Virus record (IMG/VR): IMGVR_UViG_3300048591_000147
Span: 250,957-314,956 of that record
DNA length: 64,000 nt
Reading direction: 5' to 3' (one strand)
Shown here: one piece after another, positions 28,361 to 46,953 of the stretch
Numbering within the stretch: the stretch's first letter is position 1
Layout: every line of letters begins with the position of its first letter
Position numbers and translations under genes: made by a program
Notes under the pieces: generated by a model
Database searches by the model: none
Seen by the model: only the letters and a program-made list of their open reading frames with translations
Told to the model about the DNA's origin: nothing

Positions 28361-28382
28361 TGACCGATAGGAGTTATCGTCA
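28361..28382 (+). promoter_or_regulatory. RBS-enclosing bulged hairpin, copy 1
   Basis: TGAC-C-GATA-GGAGT-TATC-GTCA(TG). Confidence 0.75.
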
Positions 28383-29455
28383 TGAGTAAAAATAATCAAT
28401 ACAATTACGCAGTATATATTGGAAGGTTTCAACCCTTTCACTTAGGTCACCTGAACACCATCAAGTCTGCACTGGAAATAAGTAAAAAGCTTATTGTAGT
28501 TCTCGGTTCAGCAAATTCCCCACGTACAATCAAATCACCATTCACGGTCAACGAAAGAATCGAAATGATTCAGGCATGTCTGACTGGCGAAGAGTGTGAT
28601 AAAATCACCTTCACTTCCGTAGAAGATCAGCTTTACAACAATGCTAATTGGGCTGCTTCGGTTTTAAAGACCGTTGGAGAGATCACAAATGGCGATACCT
28701 CAATCACATTACTTGGCGCGAAGAAAGATCAGAAGACAGAATCCTATATAAATTTCTTTAAGCAATGGGACTATACGGAAACAGCAATTCTGAATTCTGC
28801 TGGTGGGAAAAATATCGATGCAACAAAAGTTAGAGAATTGTATTTCTGCGGACACTTACAGTTTGTCAAATCTGCCGTGCCAGATGGAGTATATAATTTC
28901 TTAGAAAAGTTCCAAACTAAAGCAGAGTTCCACCCATTGTGCGCACAGTACGATGATGCGGTAAACTACGATAAGAAGTTTGCGTCTTTTCCAAAAGAGT
29001 ATTCATTGAATTTCGTCACCGTTGATGCGATTGTCGTTCAATCTGGGCATATTCTATTAATCAAGAGAAAGAAGAATCCGGGTAAAGACCTCTGGGCAGT
29101 GGTTGGCGGGCATGTTAATCCAGATGAAACACTGGAAGACGCTATGATCAGAGAACTTAGAGAAGAGACTGGAATTAAAGTTCCAGAAAAAGTGTTAAGA
29201 GGATCGATTGTAGATCGTAAGATATTTGATCATCCTGATCGTTCATTGCGTGGAAGGGTATTCATCAAAAACGGTAGAACTATTACTAGTTCTTATTGTA
29301 TTAAATTAGATGATAACAATGACCTCCCCCGTGTTAGTGGATTGGACGATGCCGCTGATGCACATTGGTTCACTTTCTCTGAAGTAAGAAATATGAGAAA
29401 TAAGTTGTTTGAGGATCACTACGATCAAATCTTGTACTTCCTCAATCGGTTGTAA
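28382..29455 (+). CDS. nadM: bifunctional NMN adenylyltransferase / Nudix ADP-ribose pyrophosphatase (NadM-Nudix)
   Basis: GRFQPFHLGH, VLGSA, Nudix box GGHVNPDETLEDAMIRELREETG, DDAADAHW. Confidence 0.95.
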   Translation: MSKNNQYNYAVYIGRFQPFHLGHLNTIKSALEISKKLIVVLGSANSPRTIKSPFTVNERIEMIQACLTGEECDKITFTSVEDQLYNNANWAASVLKTVGEITNGDTSITLLGAKKDQKTESYINFFKQWDYTETAILNSAGGKNIDATKVRELYFCGHLQFVKSAVPDGVYNFLEKFQTKAEFHPLCAQYDDAVNYDKKFASFPKEYSLNFVTVDAIVVQSGHILLIKRKKNPGKDLWAVVGGHVNPDETLEDAMIRELREETGIKVPEKVLRGSIVDRKIFDHPDRSLRGRVFIKNGRTITSSYCIKLDDNNDLPRVSGLDDAADAHWFTFSEVRNMRNKLFEDHYDQILYFLNRL

Positions 29456-29464
29456 AATAAAGTC

Positions 29465-29486
29465 TGACACATAGGAGTTATGGTCA
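29465..29486 (+). promoter_or_regulatory. RBS-enclosing bulged hairpin, copy 2
   Basis: TGAC-A-CATA-GGAGT-TATG-GTCA(TG). Confidence 0.75.
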
Positions 29487-29833
29487 TGAAAACATTGCAA
29501 GAAATTAAAGAAACTGTTAGTCAAATCCAATTTTCTAATTGGGAATTCATCGTAAAAGAAAAGAACGATGTGCCGTATCTACAAATACAGTTCATGGGCG
29601 CCTGTAATAACACAGGGGACGTCGAGAGACAGTATTGTAGGAAGTGGCAACTGTCTTACTACATGGTAACCTCAGAGATCGTTAGAACAGCGTACAAGGC
29701 GGTTCTAGCCGCTGTCGAGCATGAGGCTAGTGAGAACTTTTATTACAAGAGTGCTAGAATATTCGATCCGCATGTAGATGTTGAAGCGCTTGTGGAAGTT
29801 TCAAAGTCTGGTAGAATAGAAACTAGAAACTAA
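29486..29833 (+). CDS. hypothetical protein (RKWxLS...EHE...F.PH)
   Basis: SD spacing favours ATG 29486. Confidence 0.7.
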   Translation: MKTLQEIKETVSQIQFSNWEFIVKEKNDVPYLQIQFMGACNNTGDVERQYCRKWQLSYYMVTSEIVRTAYKAVLAAVEHEASENFYYKSARIFDPHVDVEALVEVSKSGRIETRN

Positions 29834-29873
29834 ACAATTAACAACAATGCACAAACTATTGTCTAGAGAACAA

Positions 29874-30398
29874 TCATTTCACGATGAGCGGATGATCATC
29901 TTCTGTACATCCACCGTGTAATGTCTTTGCTTGATGACAATTGGCGCATAACAACTGTAGGTTGTCTGGGAAATTATTTTTAAACGCCCATGGATAAATG
30001 GAGCCTTTTCTATGATTATTATTAAATAATTCTTTTCGGTGCTGTGCACCATCGTTATCTACATGATCCAACTGCAAATATTTATGATTGTTTTGCCCGC
30101 AACAGGCACACTTATTACCATAACCATTTAGGCATGCTTGTCTCAAATTTTGATAATTTTGTTTTTGTTTTTTACCGTGTTTATACAAGCATGAGGCGCA
30201 CATGGACTTTGTGTCTTCTTTAGGATTTATTAAACAATACCTACAAATACCATTGGCGATAGCTTTATTTTTGGATTTTTCTTGATATGCTAAATGTGCT
30301 TTATGACAAGTACTACATCTGGTCTTTCCGATATCCCTTTCATTACCACATCTAACACATTTCCCCAATTCTTTATATTTTTTATATAATTTATCCAT
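29874..30398 (-). mobile_element. free-standing HNH endonuclease
   Basis: LQLDHVDNDG...LLCANCHQAK plus N-terminal Cys repeats; GGGAGA SD; GATAAATA on minus strand at 30417-30424. Confidence 0.8.
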
Positions 30399-30498
30399 AA
30401 TATTTCTCCCATACATTATTTATCATGTGGTGAAAAATATTTGAAACAGTTGATATGATGTGATATGATGTATCATCATATTTAATTAGGTTCTTATT

Positions 30499-31131
30499 AT
30501 GAACAACGAATATAAAAAATATCCTCGAACTTTTCACCTACCTTGGAGTGAAGGTGCAACTAATGATGATAAAATATTAAAAAACGCTGCGCATTTCGAA
30601 CAGAAGCGAATTATAGTATCTGTCAAGTATGACGGTGAAAATTTTTCTGGATATTATGATTACATGCATGCGCGTAGTATAGATTCTAAGCATCACCCTA
30701 GTAGGGATTGGATCAAAAAGTTTTGGTCAGAGAGGCAAAAAGATCTTCCTATTGGATTTCGACTGTGCGGAGAGAATTTGTTTGCAAAGCATTCAATCGA
30801 ATATAACGATTTGGAATCGTATTTTTATGGTTTCTCCATGTGGGATGAGAGTAATACTTGTCTTTCTTGGGACGAGACTGTAGAATGGTTTCAGTTGCTC
30901 GGCGTCACCCCGGTGAAAGTTCTGTATGATGGTATCTATGATGAAAAACTTATCAAACAGTTGTTCGTGAATGACGGGACGATGGAAGGCTACGTGGTAA
31001 GACTGGCAGATGCTTTTCGCTATGAAGATTTTGCACAATCTGTAGCAAAATTCGTTCGTAAGGACCATGTAACTACGGGTACACACTGGATGCACGAAGA
31101 AATGGTGTCTAATAAACTAATGCGAGCATAA
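30499..31131 (+). CDS. RNA ligase family protein
   Basis: YPRTFHLPWS, KYDGEN, CGENLF, EGYVVR, AKFVR. Confidence 0.8.
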   Translation: MNNEYKKYPRTFHLPWSEGATNDDKILKNAAHFEQKRIIVSVKYDGENFSGYYDYMHARSIDSKHHPSRDWIKKFWSERQKDLPIGFRLCGENLFAKHSIEYNDLESYFYGFSMWDESNTCLSWDETVEWFQLLGVTPVKVLYDGIYDEKLIKQLFVNDGTMEGYVVRLADAFRYEDFAQSVAKFVRKDHVTTGTHWMHEEMVSNKLMRA

Positions 31132-31199
31132 TATTATGCTCGCATTTTTCCTAAAGATATTTAAAAGTAATATCACAACAATCCAAAAAGGTATCATTC

Positions 31200-31541
31200 A
31201 TGTCTAACAAAAAAACGAAACTAAAGCGCCCAGTATACGAATACAAGATCGAGCATTGGTGTCGGAGAAACCAACATTCGGATGCCATTATGAATGAAAG
31301 ATACCGCCTTTGTGTTAAAAGTAAGTTAGGCGCATTCAATGGTTATTTTAACCGATGGGTATTTGTGGACTCTTGGGGAGCAACTTATGAAGGGGATTCT
31401 AAAAAAGAGGGGTTCATTTTTGGTTCCTTGGCTCTTGCTGAAGATGCTTTAAGAAAGTTTGAAGACATTGAAAAGACCCGGTTCAATAGTTTAGATTACA
31501 CTGTCGTATACATGGCAAACGCCGGTACGTTGCGCATCTAA
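31200..31541 (+). CDS. hypothetical protein
   Basis: 113-aa ORF. Confidence 0.5.
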   Translation: MSNKKTKLKRPVYEYKIEHWCRRNQHSDAIMNERYRLCVKSKLGAFNGYFNRWVFVDSWGATYEGDSKKEGFIFGSLALAEDALRKFEDIEKTRFNSLDYTVVYMANAGTLRI

Positions 31542-31561
31542 AAAACGCTTTGAAGATCATG

Positions 31562-31590
31562 TTGACAACCAACCACATAAATAGTATAGT
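31562..31590 (+). promoter_or_regulatory. sigma70-like promoter with embedded late motif
   Basis: TTGACA-17-TATAGT; CATAAATA at 31576-31583. Confidence 0.7.
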
Positions 31591-31600
31591 ACAAACACAC

Positions 31601-31622
31601 TGACACATAGGAGTTATGGTCA
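31601..31622 (+). promoter_or_regulatory. RBS-enclosing bulged hairpin, copy 3
   Basis: Identical to copy 2. Confidence 0.75.
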
Positions 31623-33028
31623 TGACAAATCTAAGAAACAATCTTATCCTCAATCTCGTGGATAGTTACAAAACCAGCCACTTTGGCTTTATGGAAACTG
31701 GCACCACAGAAATCTTCTCTTACATTGAGAGTCGCGCTGGTAGCGAGTACAAAGAAACATTATTCTTCGGTCTTCAGTATTTCTTAAAGGAATATATGCA
31801 GACTCCAATCACCATGGAAATGGTGGATCAGGCAGAAAAATTCCTAACAGCACATGGCGAACCGTTCAATAGAACGGGTTGGGAATATATCGTTAACAAC
31901 CTTAAGGGTAAAATCCCACTTCAAGTCCGCGCAGTGCCAGAAGGCACCATTGTAACTGAAGGCAACGTATTAGTTACCTTTGTGAACACTGATCCCAATT
32001 GTGCGTGGGTTACCGGATATTTCGAAACAGCGTTTCTTCGCGCGGTGTGGTATCCGTCCACCGTTGCTACTCGTTCGTTTAATATTAAGCGAACCATTAG
32101 CAGTTATCTACAGCGCACCGGTTCTATTGAATCTCTACCATTCAAGATGATTGACTTTGGTGCACGAGGCGTTTCCAGCCTTGAATCAAGCATGCTAGGT
32201 GGTGCTGCGCATTTAGTTAATTTCTTAGGTACTGATAATATTTCGGGCATCATTTGTTCGATGGATTATTATTATTCCAAGGAAGTTACAGGATTTTCTA
32301 TCCCTGCGAGTGAGCACAGTGTTACAACAGCATGGGGCAAGAATCGGGAAGCAGATTTCTTTTCAAATGCCATTGACGTATATGGTGGTCCCGGAAAACT
32401 AATCTCATTGGTTGCAGACTCTTATAGTTTGGAAAACGCCATTAAAATTATTGGTACAACCTTAAAACAGAAGATTATTGATAATGGGTGCACTATCGTT
32501 GTTCGCCCTGATTCTGGTGATCCTGCCAGTATGGTGCTGGTTACTGTTAGATTGTTGGACCAGTATTTTGGCTGTAATAAGAATGCTGCTGGATATAACG
32601 TGCTGCACAACTCGGTCAGAGTTATTCAAGGTGACGGAATCACCATTGAATCCATTAAGGAAATTTTAGATCTTCTGGAAAAGAATGGATACAGTGCCGA
32701 TAACGTTACTTTCGGATGTGGTGGCTATTTGCTCCAGCAATTGAATCGTGATACACAACGATTTGCCATGAAAGCATCCTCAGTCGTAGTTGGTGGTGAT
32801 CGCAGAAATATTTGTAAGACGCCTAAGACTGATATGTCCAAGCAGTCTAAATCTGGTCGCTTGGCATATGTCAAATTTATCGGTCAAGATATTAAGCGTA
32901 CCATTACTGTCGAACAGTTTGATCCAACCATCCACGAAGATTTGATGGAAACTGTTTACAGAGATGGTGAGATTTTGAAAGTGTATACGTTTGACGAAGT
33001 TAGGGCGAATGCAACCAAGAGTTTATAA
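31622..33028 (+). CDS. nadV: nicotinamide phosphoribosyltransferase (NAMPT)
   Basis: DSYKTSH, DFGARG, ASEHS, VRPDSGDP, IQGDG, FGCGGYLLQ, RDTQRFAMK. Confidence 0.95.
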   Translation: MTNLRNNLILNLVDSYKTSHFGFMETGTTEIFSYIESRAGSEYKETLFFGLQYFLKEYMQTPITMEMVDQAEKFLTAHGEPFNRTGWEYIVNNLKGKIPLQVRAVPEGTIVTEGNVLVTFVNTDPNCAWVTGYFETAFLRAVWYPSTVATRSFNIKRTISSYLQRTGSIESLPFKMIDFGARGVSSLESSMLGGAAHLVNFLGTDNISGIICSMDYYYSKEVTGFSIPASEHSVTTAWGKNREADFFSNAIDVYGGPGKLISLVADSYSLENAIKIIGTTLKQKIIDNGCTIVVRPDSGDPASMVLVTVRLLDQYFGCNKNAAGYNVLHNSVRVIQGDGITIESIKEILDLLEKNGYSADNVTFGCGGYLLQQLNRDTQRFAMKASSVVVGGDRRNICKTPKTDMSKQSKSGRLAYVKFIGQDIKRTITVEQFDPTIHEDLMETVYRDGEILKVYTFDEVRANATKSL

Positions 33029-45714: not shown

Positions 45715-46410
45715 ATGAGAATAGTAGCTACTAGTGACACCCACTTTCCGGTGAAACCCGGAATGATCCCCTTCGGTGACGTTTTTTTGCATTGCGGTGA
45801 TCTTATGCAGAATGGGTATCCGTCAGAATGGCCAGATTGTTTAGACTGGTTAAATGAATTACCACATAAGGTAAAAATAATTACATTTGGAAATCATGAT
45901 TTCCATCCATTCCTATATCCCGGACCATCGTTACAAGATTTAAGAAAGATTGGAGTAACCGTATTAGGATATCCGGGCAATTCACATTATTATGCAATGA
46001 CATTACCCAATAACATGGTGGTTGCAGCTTGCCCCTATGTTAATAATTTACCAAGATGGGCATTTAATGCCAGTCGAGAGCAAGTAGTATATCATTTAGA
46101 ACAGCTAACACGACTACAGATTGTGGATATAATGATGACTCATATGCCAATATACGGAGTATTGGATACAGTGAATAATCGTCATACTGGTTCATTGGAA
46201 TATCAAAGCTTTCTCATACGCCAACAACCTCCTATAAAATATTGGTTTTGCGGACATATTCACGAAGGCTACGGACATTACATTGATGATGAGCCATATG
46301 AGAAAAAGTTTCATAATCCATTTGGTCGCACTGGTTGCAATATCTACAATGTCGCCATGTGTAATAGATTACAACAGCATGTTAATAAGCCAGTAGTTAT
46401 AGACGTTTAA
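45715..46410 (+). CDS. calcineurin-like metallophosphoesterase
   Basis: SDTH, GDL, GNHD, HMP, GHIH. Confidence 0.9.
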   Translation: MRIVATSDTHFPVKPGMIPFGDVFLHCGDLMQNGYPSEWPDCLDWLNELPHKVKIITFGNHDFHPFLYPGPSLQDLRKIGVTVLGYPGNSHYYAMTLPNNMVVAACPYVNNLPRWAFNASREQVVYHLEQLTRLQIVDIMMTHMPIYGVLDTVNNRHTGSLEYQSFLIRQQPPIKYWFCGHIHEGYGHYIDDEPYEKKFHNPFGRTGCNIYNVAMCNRLQQHVNKPVVIDV

Positions 46411-46422
46411 TAGGAATTAGTC

Positions 46423-46953
46423 ATGACATCATATTCAGCAATAGTAGCTTTAACTTTAGAAAATGGAATGGGCATGAATGGAAAGATCCCATGGAGGGTG
46501 CCAGAGGACTTTAAATACTTTAAGTCGTTCACCATGGGCAAGACCTGTGTGATGGGTAGAAAGACATATGAGGATATTCTAACATATGCAAAGGACAAAG
46601 ATAATCCATTACCCGGAAGACAATTAGTAGTACTATCAACTACTTATACTGAGATTGATGATCCGTCTTGGGGCGCAAGACCCATCGTGCCTAAAATCGT
46701 TAGAAGGATTAATGGCATGCATCAGTTGTCTGGAACGGCTGGCCCGATATGTTTTATTGGCGGCGCAGCGATATACAAAGAGGCTGCTGATAGATTCAGT
46801 AATATAATATTATCAGTTACTAGACTTCATTTTCCAACTGTAGTAGAGTGTGATACGTTCTTCGTCCCTGAAGAGTCTGGATTCAAGCGAATTCATAGAT
46901 TTTTCTTAGGTGAGACACCACACGTTATTGAAACCTACATGAATTGGAGGTAA
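46423..46953 (+). CDS. folA: dihydrofolate reductase
   Basis: GKIPW..PEDFKYFK, VMGRKTY, IGGAAIY, CDTFF. Confidence 0.93.
   Translation: MTSYSAIVALTLENGMGMNGKIPWRVPEDFKYFKSFTMGKTCVMGRKTYEDILTYAKDKDNPLPGRQLVVLSTTYTEIDDPSWGARPIVPKIVRRINGMHQLSGTAGPICFIGGAAIYKEAADRFSNIILSVTRLHFPTVVECDTFFVPEESGFKRIHRFFLGETPHVIETYMNWR

What the first reader, a model, noticed from the sequence alone, without database searches (positions are those of the whole stretch)
28361..31622. Covarying bulged hairpin over the RBS and AUG defines a putative NAD-salvage translational regulon
Three genes (nadM-Nudix, the unknown 29486 ORF and NAMPT) start at the 3' base of the same 22-nt element: a 4-bp stem TGAC/GTCA, a one-nt 5' bulge, a 4-bp stem and a GGAGT loop holding the Shine-Dalgarno. 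Copy 1 has GATA/TATC with a bulged C; copies 2 and 3 have CATA/TATG with a bulged A. That compensatory change points to selection on RNA structure. The architecture recalls the MS2 coat-protein operator. A looser version precedes DHFR (46402-46422). I know of no described phage operator coordinating NAD reconstitution genes. The regulator is unknown: a phage RNA-binding protein, the Nudix enzyme itself, a host CsrA-type protein (loop is not an ideal ANGGA) or a DNA-level NrtR-type operator.
Basis: partly seen in the sequence, partly recalled or inferred. Interest (0 to 1): 0.82.

Follow-up and report, generated by a model that had tools for sequence, protein, structure and literature searches.

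The report
Start-site hairpin on NAD-salvage genes
A small RNA hairpin that folds the ribosome-binding site and start codon is real and kept by compensatory mutations on this phage's NAD-salvage genes. It is not a phage invention: the same kind of hairpin sits on the nadM and nadV genes of many bacteria and other phages, and I found no description of it.

Summary
Three copies of a 24-nt bulged hairpin (28361-28384, 29465-29488, 31601-31624) end on the AUG of NadM-Nudix, ORF115 and NAMPT, against 0.18 expected by chance. In related jumbo-phage contigs the element recurs only in front of NAD-cluster genes. Three stem pairs covary there (95% of cells paired, 0 of 500 shuffles reach this).

The interpretation needs widening. 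More distant phages (RsoM2USA, XacN1, RTH11, a cyanophage) and about two thirds of the bacterial nadV starts tested carry the same architecture with different stem sequences. The Shine-Dalgarno sits at the apex, the spacer forms the 3' arm, the helix ends at the AUG, and a one-base 5' bulge is usual. Bacterial nadM, just upstream, has its own version.

A bulge on one strand only, G-U pairs and fixed register with the AUG point to RNA, not a DNA operator such as NrtR's. Rfam 15 has no match and I found no paper.

The most likely function is a translational gate or operator that travels with the nadM-nadV module. Its trans-acting factor, if any, is unknown. ORF115 shows no RNA-binding fold. The claimed DHFR copy is not supported.

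The parts
28361..28384 (+). Hairpin copy 1 with the AUG of nadM-Nudix: UGAC / bulged C / GAUA / loop GGAGU / UAUC / GUCA, then UG
   Evidence: 41.3 bits
28382..29455 (+). nadM-Nudix gene: NMN adenylyltransferase fused to a NUDIX ADP-ribose pyrophosphatase domain
   Evidence: Pfam PF01467 and PF00293
29465..29488 (+). Hairpin copy 2 with the AUG of ORF115. It starts 9 nt after the nadM stop codon, and no promoter lies between
   Evidence: 50 bits
29486..29833 (+). ORF115, a conserved protein of unknown function (PHROG 1540). The predicted fold is alpha-beta-beta-beta-alpha-alpha
31562..31590 (+). Sigma-70-like promoter TTGACA-17-TATAGT, ending 10 nt before copy 3. The hairpin would lie near the 5' end of that transcript
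   Evidence: 11 of 12 matches. Consensus match only; no transcript data
31601..31624 (+). Hairpin copy 3 with the AUG of NAMPT. It is identical to copy 2 over 26 nt
   Evidence: 48.7 bits
31622..33028 (+). NAMPT (nadV) gene, nicotinamide phosphoribosyltransferase
   Evidence: Pfam PF18127 and PF04095. Best cultured relative is Ralstonia phage RsoM2USA at 52% identity

Best explanation
The element is an RNA hairpin in the translation initiation region. It travels with the nadM-nadV (NARP2-type) NAD-salvage module.

In the mRNA, the 8-nt spacer between the Shine-Dalgarno and the AUG pairs with the bases just upstream of the Shine-Dalgarno. GGAG is held in a 5-nt loop, and the A of the AUG closes an 8-bp helix with one 5' bulge. 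A 30S subunit can start only after the helix opens.

All genes carrying the hairpin therefore share one restrained initiation rate and one common handle for control. I think the helix is a regulated operator rather than a fixed brake. In that reading a hairpin-binding factor that moves with the module stabilises it and shuts translation when NAD supply is adequate. NadM-Nudix or NAMPT itself is my first guess.

Status of each step:
- Shown: the structure exists, it is kept by compensatory change, it is specific to NAD-cluster genes, and it is shared with bacteria.
- Inferred: that it limits initiation.
- Speculative: that a factor binds it, and which one.

My sub-confidences are 0.85 for an RNA-level translational element, about 0.5 for regulation by a trans factor, and about 0.25 for that factor being NadM-Nudix or NAMPT.
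For: Covariation in the window's phage group:
- 27 distinct copies are 95.4% paired.
- Pair 8-27 reads GC 15, AU 9, UA 1, UG 1.
- Pair 9-26 reads AU 12, UA 9, GC 4, CG 2.
- Pair 12-24 reads CG 22, GC 5.
- 0 of 500 shuffles reach the observed score, and slid registers collapse to 16-49% paired.
- Model-found copies add CUUA/UAAG in the inner stem and UACU/AGUA in the outer stem.

Specificity:
- Chance matches to the same DNA patterns show no complementarity.
- All 38 model hits with E below 0.01 in 514 kb of related phage DNA lie at nadM, NAMPT, ORF115 or p215 starts.

Same architecture with unrelated stems in other phages:
- RsoM2USA: UUUGAAA-GGAGU-UUUCAAA-UG
- XacN1: ACUG-A-UAUA-GGAGU-UAUA-CAGU-AUG
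- RTH11: GAC-A-UGAAG-GAA-CUUCA-GUC
- L115 and L116 also show it.

Bacteria:
- 36 of 53 nadV starts and 19 of 51 nadM starts have the hairpin, against 5 of 97 neighbouring control starts.
- Hahella, for example, reads UGAC-C-GGA-GGAUU-UCC-GUCA-UG.

RNA rather than DNA:
- The bulge lies on the 5' side in 25 nadV hairpins and on the 3' side in 1.
- nadM hairpins hold 9 G-U pairs and 0 A-C.
- The helix is always in register with the Shine-Dalgarno and AUG, and it also occurs inside operons.

Pointers to a factor:
- Perfect 7-bp A-U stems of only about -3 kcal/mol are kept.
- ORF115 relatives outside NAD clusters lack the hairpin.
- The nadV hairpin goes with an adjacent upstream nadM: 35 of 45 against 3 of 30.
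Against: - No experiment or transcript data exist. The only public runs holding the sequence look like DNA.
- Single hairpins do not fold better than shuffles (z about -1).
- Apart from the Shine-Dalgarno, no unpaired base is conserved. The bulge is A, C, G or U, or absent. This weakens the case for a sequence-specific binder and fits a factor-independent brake equally well.
- The link to nadM adjacency is not significant once phylogeny is taken into account (median p 0.06 to 0.22).
- I know of no report that NadM-Nudix or NAMPT binds RNA.
- About a third of bacterial nadV genes, such as those of Paraburkholderia and Pelomonas, do without the hairpin.
Confidence: 0.45

Rival explanations
1. 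Factor-independent tuning. The hairpin is a built-in brake and insulator. It holds translation of the salvage enzymes at a low, matched level and shields the ribosome-binding site from whatever sequence lies upstream after horizontal transfer. At internal copies it may also tie initiation to translation of the gene upstream. Nothing binds it.
For: - Only the pairing and the Shine-Dalgarno are conserved. Stems, loop tail and bulge base drift freely.
- The module is found in many phyla and in phages of many hosts, where a shared host factor is unlikely.
- Internal copies start 7-15 nt after the upstream stop codon.
Against: - A weak Shine-Dalgarno would give the same result at no cost, yet the helix has been kept through many compensatory changes.
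- A-U-only versions of about -3 kcal/mol are, by my recollection of the de Smit and van Duin measurements, too weak to slow a ribosome much. They are nevertheless perfectly paired.
- Stability is not held constant across genomes: it ranges from -3 to -11 kcal/mol.
- First genes of operons and promoter-proximal copies cannot be explained by coupling.
Confidence: 0.28
2. mRNA stability or processing site. Either the hairpin protects the 5' end of the message, or its GGAG loop is the target of a sequence-specific endoribonuclease of the RegB kind, or is shielded from one.
For: - Several copies lie 5-25 nt after promoter-like -10 boxes. Examples are window 31562-31590, L006, L095 and L102.
- T4 RegB cuts GGAG/U in initiation regions. 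[quoted passage not shown]
Against: - Copies inside operons are not at 5' ends.
- The strict register with the AUG is not needed for stability.
- Bacteria that carry the hairpin have no RegB, by my own knowledge.
- No RegB-like gene was looked for or seen in the 64-kb window.
Confidence: 0.1
3. DNA-level operator. The inverted repeat binds a dimeric transcription factor of the NrtR or NadR type.
For: - It is an inverted repeat in DNA, and symmetric positions would also covary.
- Some copies lie just downstream of promoter-like sites.
- NrtR does control nadM-nadV and prs-nadV operons (PMC2330246).
Against: - The NrtR motif is a 21-bp palindrome with a GT-N7-AC core before the first gene. This element is TGAC-N14-GTCA centred on the Shine-Dalgarno.
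- The extra base is always on the sense 5' arm (25 against 1).
- G-U is tolerated and A-C is not in nadM hairpins.
- No half-site sequence is shared between lineages.
- Copies occur between genes of one operon.
Confidence: 0.05
4. Recombination cassette. The identical repeats are boundaries for modular gene shuffling, as PeSL elements are in T4-type phages, and have no role in expression.
For: - Copies 2 and 3 are identical over 26 nt.
- They flank a variable insert holding an HNH endonuclease, an RNA ligase and an unknown ORF.
- Gene order between the copies differs among relatives.
Against: - PeSLs are a promoter plus a terminator stem-loop, not a ribosome-binding site (PMC2839356, PMC4122927).
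- Compensatory changes keep the pairing.
- Single-copy bacterial nadV genes have the hairpin.
- It is always in register with the AUG.
- Recombination between copies may still be a by-product.
Confidence: 0.03

Closest known systems
MS2/R17 coat-protein operator on the replicase start
   Same: A short hairpin with a single bulged purine on the 5' strand, holding the ribosome-binding site and AUG of the regulated gene. Occupancy would block initiation.
   Different: - No cognate protein is known here.
- The loop is the Shine-Dalgarno itself and varies.
- The bulge base varies or is missing in relatives.
- The element serves 3-4 genes and is shared with bacteria.
- ORF115 gave only insignificant fold hits to Q-beta coat and dsRBD chains (E 0.04-0.5, TM 0.2-0.3).
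Ribosome-binding-site-sequestering hairpins of T4-type phages (genes e, soc, 49; mobE of Aeh1)
   Same: A local helix hides the Shine-Dalgarno and AUG, so translation depends on the helix being absent or opened. The mobE case is cited in PMC3014915; the rest is from my own knowledge.
   Different: Those hairpins are gene-specific and are relieved by a second promoter inside the hairpin. Here one conserved design recurs on a metabolic module across bacteria and phages, and promoter-like sites lie outside the helix.
T4 autogenous translational operators (gp43 hairpin, RegA sites, gp32)
   Same: A phage enzyme or regulator binds RNA at or near the start site and represses translation (PMC3014915). 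This is the model for my preferred mechanism.
   Different: The gp43 operator has a conserved loop sequence and lies upstream of the ribosome-binding site. RegA sites are unstructured. No binding is shown here.
NrtR and NadR operators of NAD genes
   Same: They control the same genes (nadM-nadV, prs-nadV) and are palindromic.
   Different: They are DNA sites of 21 bp (GT-N7-AC core) or 18 bp (TGTTTA-N6-TAAACA) at promoters (PMC2330246). The present element fits neither and behaves as RNA.
CsrA/RsmA binding hairpins
   Same: GGA lies in the loop of a short hairpin overlapping the Shine-Dalgarno.
   Different: - The window copies read UAGGA, not ANGGA.
- There is no second GGA site nearby.
- The hairpin also occurs in cyanobacterial, alphaproteobacterial and Campylobacterota nadV genes. 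From my own knowledge CsrA is often absent from the first two groups.
NAD+ riboswitches (nadA and pnuC motifs)
   Same: Cis-acting RNA control of NAD genes, with the Shine-Dalgarno involved in the pnuC class.
   Different: No Rfam match even at E up to 10. A 22-nt hairpin has no obvious ligand pocket, and the flanks are not conserved.

Membership tests
nadM/nadV start-site hairpin (class defined here from bacteria and phages) | Shine-Dalgarno at the apex, the spacer as the 3' arm, and the helix ending within about 3 nt of the AUG | tested here: met
   All three window copies. The same holds in 36 of 53 bacterial nadV starts against 5 of 97 controls.
nadM/nadV start-site hairpin (class defined here from bacteria and phages) | Pairing kept by compensatory change | tested here: met
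   three covarying pairs, 0 of 500 shuffles; stems are wholly replaced between lineages.
nadM/nadV start-site hairpin (class defined here from bacteria and phages) | One-base bulge on the 5' strand, 3-4 pairs from the base (nadV type) | tested here: met
   Present in the window copies. In bacterial nadV the count is 25 with a 5' bulge, 13 with no bulge (8 of these hold a 1x1 internal loop) and 1 with a 3' bulge.
nadM/nadV start-site hairpin (class defined here from bacteria and phages) | One covariance model recovers both phage and bacterial copies | tested here: not met
   Model R1, built from the phage group alone, found only 3 weak hits (15-16 bits) in 86 bacterial and cultured-phage loci. 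RNAalifold gave no consensus on a mixed MAFFT alignment because registers differ. The grouping therefore rests on architecture and gene context, not on a single model.
MS2-type coat-protein operator | Hairpin with a 5' bulged A enclosing the start codon | tested here: met
   The bulge is A in 24 of 27 copies of the phage group.
MS2-type coat-protein operator | Conserved loop and bulge bases read by a cognate protein | tested here: not met
   The loop varies beyond the Shine-Dalgarno (GGAGU, GGAGC, GGAGA, GGAUU, GAG). The bulge is A, C, G or U, or absent.
MS2-type coat-protein operator | A cognate RNA-binding repressor encoded nearby | tested here: inconclusive
   The ORF115 model has pLDDT 95, but there is no significant fold match: Foldseek E at least 0.04, VIA Z at most 5.7. 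Binding cannot be tested with these tools.
NrtR DNA operator | 21-bp palindrome with a GT-N7-AC core upstream of the first gene of the operon | tested here: not met
   The motif is as given in PMC2330246. The element is TGAC-N14-GTCA, is asymmetric, and also lies between genes.
CsrA binding site | GGA in a hairpin loop within an ANGGA context, usually with a second GGA site | tested here: inconclusive
   GGA in the loop is met. ANGGA is not met in the window (UAGGA). No second site lies within the leader. The consensus is recalled from my own knowledge.
Any Rfam 15 family, including NAD+ riboswitches | Covariance-model match | tested here: not met
   No relevant hit at E up to 10 on the window region. 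No hit at gathering score on 20 bacterial and phage loci.
PeSL mobile regulatory cassette | Early promoter joined to a terminator stem-loop, repeated at module borders | tested here: not met
   The stem-loop here holds the Shine-Dalgarno and AUG and has no U tract. Only copy 3 has a promoter-like site. The definition comes from PMC2839356 and PMC4122927.

The most novel reading that the evidence does not exclude
The hairpin is the operator of an undescribed, portable feedback loop. An enzyme of the salvage module (NadM-Nudix or NAMPT) binds the start-site hairpins of its own operon in a way that depends on NAD or ADP-ribose. Translation of the NAD-rebuilding genes would then switch on when NAD is depleted, for example by a host defence system. 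The loop would be carried intact between bacteria and phages.
Probability: 0.15. Interest if true: 0.85.

Novelty: new member of a known kind. Interest (0 to 1): 0.62.

Why it matters
NAMPT plus NMN adenylyltransferase is the NARP2 route by which phages rebuild NAD+ after defence systems destroy it (bioRxiv 10.1101/2024.02.11.579819). Nothing I found describes how these genes are controlled after transcription.

A covarying start-site hairpin shared by phage and bacterial nadM-nadV modules gives a concrete, testable control point for both settings: bacterial nicotinamide salvage and phage counter-defence. It also adds a candidate family to the catalogue of cis-regulatory RNAs.

It further shows a regulatory RNA moving together with its gene. 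Xanthomonas phage RTH11's NAMPT nests inside Xanthomonadales NAMPT and carries their type of hairpin.

Tried and rejected
- Megablast of the region against INPHARED phages gave no match. The window is IMG/VR contig 3300048591_000147, 315 kb.
- Rfam gave nothing relevant.
- Model R1 was too sequence-specific to reach bacterial copies. RNAalifold on a mixed MAFFT alignment gave no structure because the hairpins sit in different registers relative to the AUG. A single family-wide alignment was therefore not achieved.
- The covariation count within one gammaproteobacterial subgroup was modest, with one covarying pair.
- G-U against A-C counts in nadV hairpins were uninformative (1 against 4). In nadM hairpins they were clear (9 against 0).
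- Public 'RNA-Seq' wastewater runs holding the sequence look like DNA and gave no transcript ends.
- ORF115 has no Pfam family, only an unknown-function PHROG, and no significant fold match. The weak best matches are type III secretion chaperone or YbjN-like folds at Z 5.7, below the tool's own noise level.
- The DHFR 'looser copy' has no model hit, and no relatives were retrievable.
- CATAAATA as a promoter motif is not above chance in number.
- Translational coupling cannot be the general explanation: bacterial nadM-nadV gaps are about 80 nt, and first genes of operons also carry hairpins.
- The test of co-evolution between the nadV hairpin and nadM adjacency was underpowered.
Full report
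**Observation.** The three elements are in the sequence as described.
- Copy 1 (28361-28384) reads TGAC-C-GATA-GGAGT-TATC-GTCA-TG and ends on the ATG of a NadM-Nudix gene.
- Copies 2 (29465-29488) and 3 (31601-31624) read TGAC-A-CATA-GGAGT-TATG-GTCA-TG. They end on the ATG of a 115-aa unknown ORF and of NAMPT.
- Pfam confirms the two enzymes and finds nothing for ORF115.
- The pattern has 3 matches in the window against 0.18 expected.
- Each RNA folds as drawn, at -5.6 to -6.5 kcal/mol. That is no better than shuffled sequence, with z about -1. Stability alone proves nothing.
- The ATG six bases upstream, which ORF listing takes as the start of ORF115 and NAMPT, sits 2 nt after the Shine-Dalgarno. 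It is absent from the GATA/TATC copies, so 29486 and 31622 are the likely starts.

**Relatives of the phage.** The region has no close match among deposited phages. The window is part of a 315-kb IMG/VR contig.
- The exact 24-mer occurs in five other viral contigs. In each it lies in front of nadM, ORF115 or NAMPT genes whose proteins are only 35-86% identical to the window's.
- Degenerate DNA patterns brought in many more copies from viral and metagenome contigs, together with chance matches that serve as a control.
- In the chance matches the free positions are not complementary. In the NAD-gene copies they are.
- Outer stems include TGAC/GTCA, TATC/GATA, TGTC/GACA, TTGC/GCAA, AACC/GGTA, AAGC/GCTA and ATGC/GCGA. 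The inner stem is CATA/TATG or GATA/TATC.
- On 27 distinct copies, 95.4% of cells pair and three pairs covary. No shuffle of 500 reaches the observed score, and slid registers fall to 16-49% paired.
- The search patterns fixed the loop and most of the inner stem, so their invariance in this set is partly imposed.
- A covariance model built from the set then found copies outside the patterns. These have loops GGAGC and GGAGA, inner stem CUUA/UAAG and outer stem UACU/AGUA. Beyond the Shine-Dalgarno, it is the pairing that is kept.

**Specificity.** In the window the model scores the three copies at 41-50 bits and nothing else above 15 bits. The DHFR site is not among the hits at E up to 10.
- In 514 kb of related phage loci, all 38 hits with E below 0.01 lie at the start of nadM, NAMPT, ORF115 or a 215-aa unknown gene. 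That gene (p215, PHROG 1843) sits just upstream of nadM in one contig.
- ORF115 relatives found by protein search in phages without adjacent NAD genes have ordinary leaders.

**The element is not private to this phage group.** More distant phages that share the nadM-ORF115-NAMPT cluster have the same design with other sequences. One example is UUUUAUA-GGAGU-UAUAAAA-UG on nadM and UAAUUAA-GGAGU-UUAAUUA-UG on NAMPT of one contig.
- Cultured phages show it on NAMPT:

| Phage | NAMPT leader |
|---|---|
| Ralstonia phage RsoM2USA | UUUGAAA-GGAGU-UUUCAAA-UG |
| Xanthomonas phage XacN1 | ACUG-A-UAUA-GGAGU-UAUA-CAGU-AUG |
| Xanthomonas phage RTH11 | GAC-A-UGAAG-GAA-CUUCA-GUC |
| Synechococcus phage B23 | present |
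| Acidovorax phage ACP17 | present, weaker |
| KVP40-like Vibrio phage CZ01 | absent |

- Other annotated genes in those loci do not show it.
- I then fetched 80 bacterial NAMPT loci. Most have a hairpin of the same build on nadV:

| Lineage | nadV leader |
|---|---|
| Hahella | UGAC-C-GGA-GGAUU-UCC-GUCA-UG |
| Burkholderia | GGC-A-UAGAG-GAG-CUCUA-GCC-AUG |
| Xanthomonadales and Caulobacter | GACG-C-GAAG-GAG-CUUC-(C)-CGUC-AUG |
| Variovorax | GUGAAAG-GAG-CUUUCAC-AUG |

- Under one fixed criterion, 36 of 53 nadV starts and 19 of 51 starts of the upstream gene qualify, against 5 of 97 other starts in the same loci.
- The upstream gene is nadM-Nudix. Its own hairpin, ACAGCAA-GGAGN-UUGCUGU, is unbulged and varies by compensatory and G-U changes.
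- A downstream SPFH gene sometimes has one too.
- Paraburkholderia, Pelomonas and some others lack the hairpin.
- On a NAMPT tree, phage sequences are scattered among bacterial ones. RTH11 nests within Xanthomonadales and has their hairpin type.
- The window's elements share the UGAC...GUCAUG outer stem and 5' bulge with gammaproteobacterial nadV. In this phage group that nadV-type hairpin has spread to nadM, ORF115 and p215.

**RNA or DNA.** An inverted repeat read by a dimeric DNA-binding protein would also covary. Several facts point to RNA.
- The extra base lies on the sense 5' arm in 25 bacterial nadV hairpins and on the 3' arm in 1.
- nadM hairpins hold nine G-U pairs and no A-C.
- No half-site sequence is shared between lineages.
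- The centre is always the Shine-Dalgarno and the end is always the AUG.
- Copies lie inside operons. Copy 2, for example, starts 9 nt after the nadM stop.
- The NrtR operator is a 21-bp palindrome with a GT-N7-AC core before the first gene (PMC2330246) and does not fit.
- Rfam 15 has no match, and full-text searches found no description.

**Mechanism.** What follows is inference.
- The 3' arm is the whole spacer between the Shine-Dalgarno and the AUG, so a 30S subunit must open the helix to initiate. All genes that carry it get the same restrained start rate.
- Two readings remain: a fixed brake, or an operator for a factor.
- I lean to the operator for four reasons:
  - A fixed low rate could be had from a weak Shine-Dalgarno, yet the helix is kept through many compensatory changes across several phyla.
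  - A-U-only versions of about -3 kcal/mol are still perfectly paired.
  - Genes recruited into the phage module acquire the hairpin, while their relatives elsewhere lack it.
  - The nadV hairpin goes with an adjacent nadM, 35 of 45 against 3 of 30.
- That last link is only suggestive once phylogeny is allowed for, with median p 0.06-0.22.
- A factor valid across so many hosts should be universal or encoded in the module, hence NadM-Nudix or NAMPT as first candidates. Neither has a known RNA-binding activity.
- ORF115 is a poor candidate. Many hairpin-bearing phages and all the bacteria lack it next to the genes, and its confident model (pLDDT 95) has no significant fold match.
- Against any sequence-specific binder, nothing unpaired is conserved except the Shine-Dalgarno.
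- Other roles are less likely but open. The hairpin could protect a 5' end, since copy 3 lies 10 nt after a TTGACA-17-TATAGT site. Its loop could also be a target of a RegB-like nuclease that cuts GGAG/U (PMC3014915).
- The public runs that hold the sequence appear to be DNA and gave no transcript information.

**Verdict.** It is a covarying start-site hairpin that belongs to the nadM-nadV salvage module in bacteria and phages, multiplied here onto three genes. It is a new member of the known class of ribosome-binding-site hairpins. Its regulator, if any, remains to be found.

Noticed in passing
window 29874-31541: Between the identical hairpin copies 2 and 3 lie three ORFs: an HNH endonuclease on the minus strand (29874-30416), an RNA-ligase-family ORF (30499-31131, PF09414) and an unknown ORF (31200-31541). 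Relatives have nadM directly followed by NAMPT, or ORF115 followed by the RNA ligase. The stretch between the repeats is therefore variable and may have been inserted or shuffled.
   Followed up: partly
window 31119-31146: A perfect 12-bp palindrome with a 4-nt loop lies right after the RNA-ligase gene. It is terminator-like on the minus strand and probably works in both directions.
   Followed up: no
window 14587, 24685, 28346, 31576, 33313, 60373 (+ strand): CATAAATA lies 16-46 nt upstream of six plus-strand gene starts, including nadM and NAMPT. It resembles a T4-late-type promoter box, but the total count (11) is not above chance (7.4).
   Followed up: partly
window 46395-46430: The DHFR leader reads GAC-GUU-UAAU-AGGA-AUUA-GUC-AUG and folds with z about -2, enclosing the Shine-Dalgarno. 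The hairpin model does not recover it, and no relatives were found for comparison.
   Followed up: partly
window starts 6252 and 14629: Two further genes have A-U-only palindromes around their Shine-Dalgarno (for example AUUAAA-GGAA-UUUAAU). In this AT-rich genome these may be chance.
   Followed up: no
L095:240-884 (minus strand) and L095:2-205 (minus strand): A 215-aa protein of unknown function (PHROG 1843) sits just upstream of nadM in a related metagenome contig. It carries the same hairpin and is a possible fourth member of the module.
   Followed up: partly
L166:2959-3972, L167:3097-4125: In some bacteria the nadM-nadV operon is followed by an SPFH/Band 7 gene whose start has its own Shine-Dalgarno-in-loop hairpin.
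   Followed up: partly
L066, L121, L130 (ORF115 relatives): ORF115 stays next to NAMPT in distant phages whose genes have no Shine-Dalgarno and no hairpin. Its link to NAMPT is therefore older than, and independent of, the hairpin. Most other ORF115 relatives are not near NAD genes.
   Followed up: partly
L151 (Xanthomonas phage RTH11) against Xanthomonadales loci L205-L230: RTH11 NAMPT nests inside the NAMPT clade of its host order and carries that clade's hairpin type. This is a likely case of gene and leader captured together from a host.
   Followed up: partly
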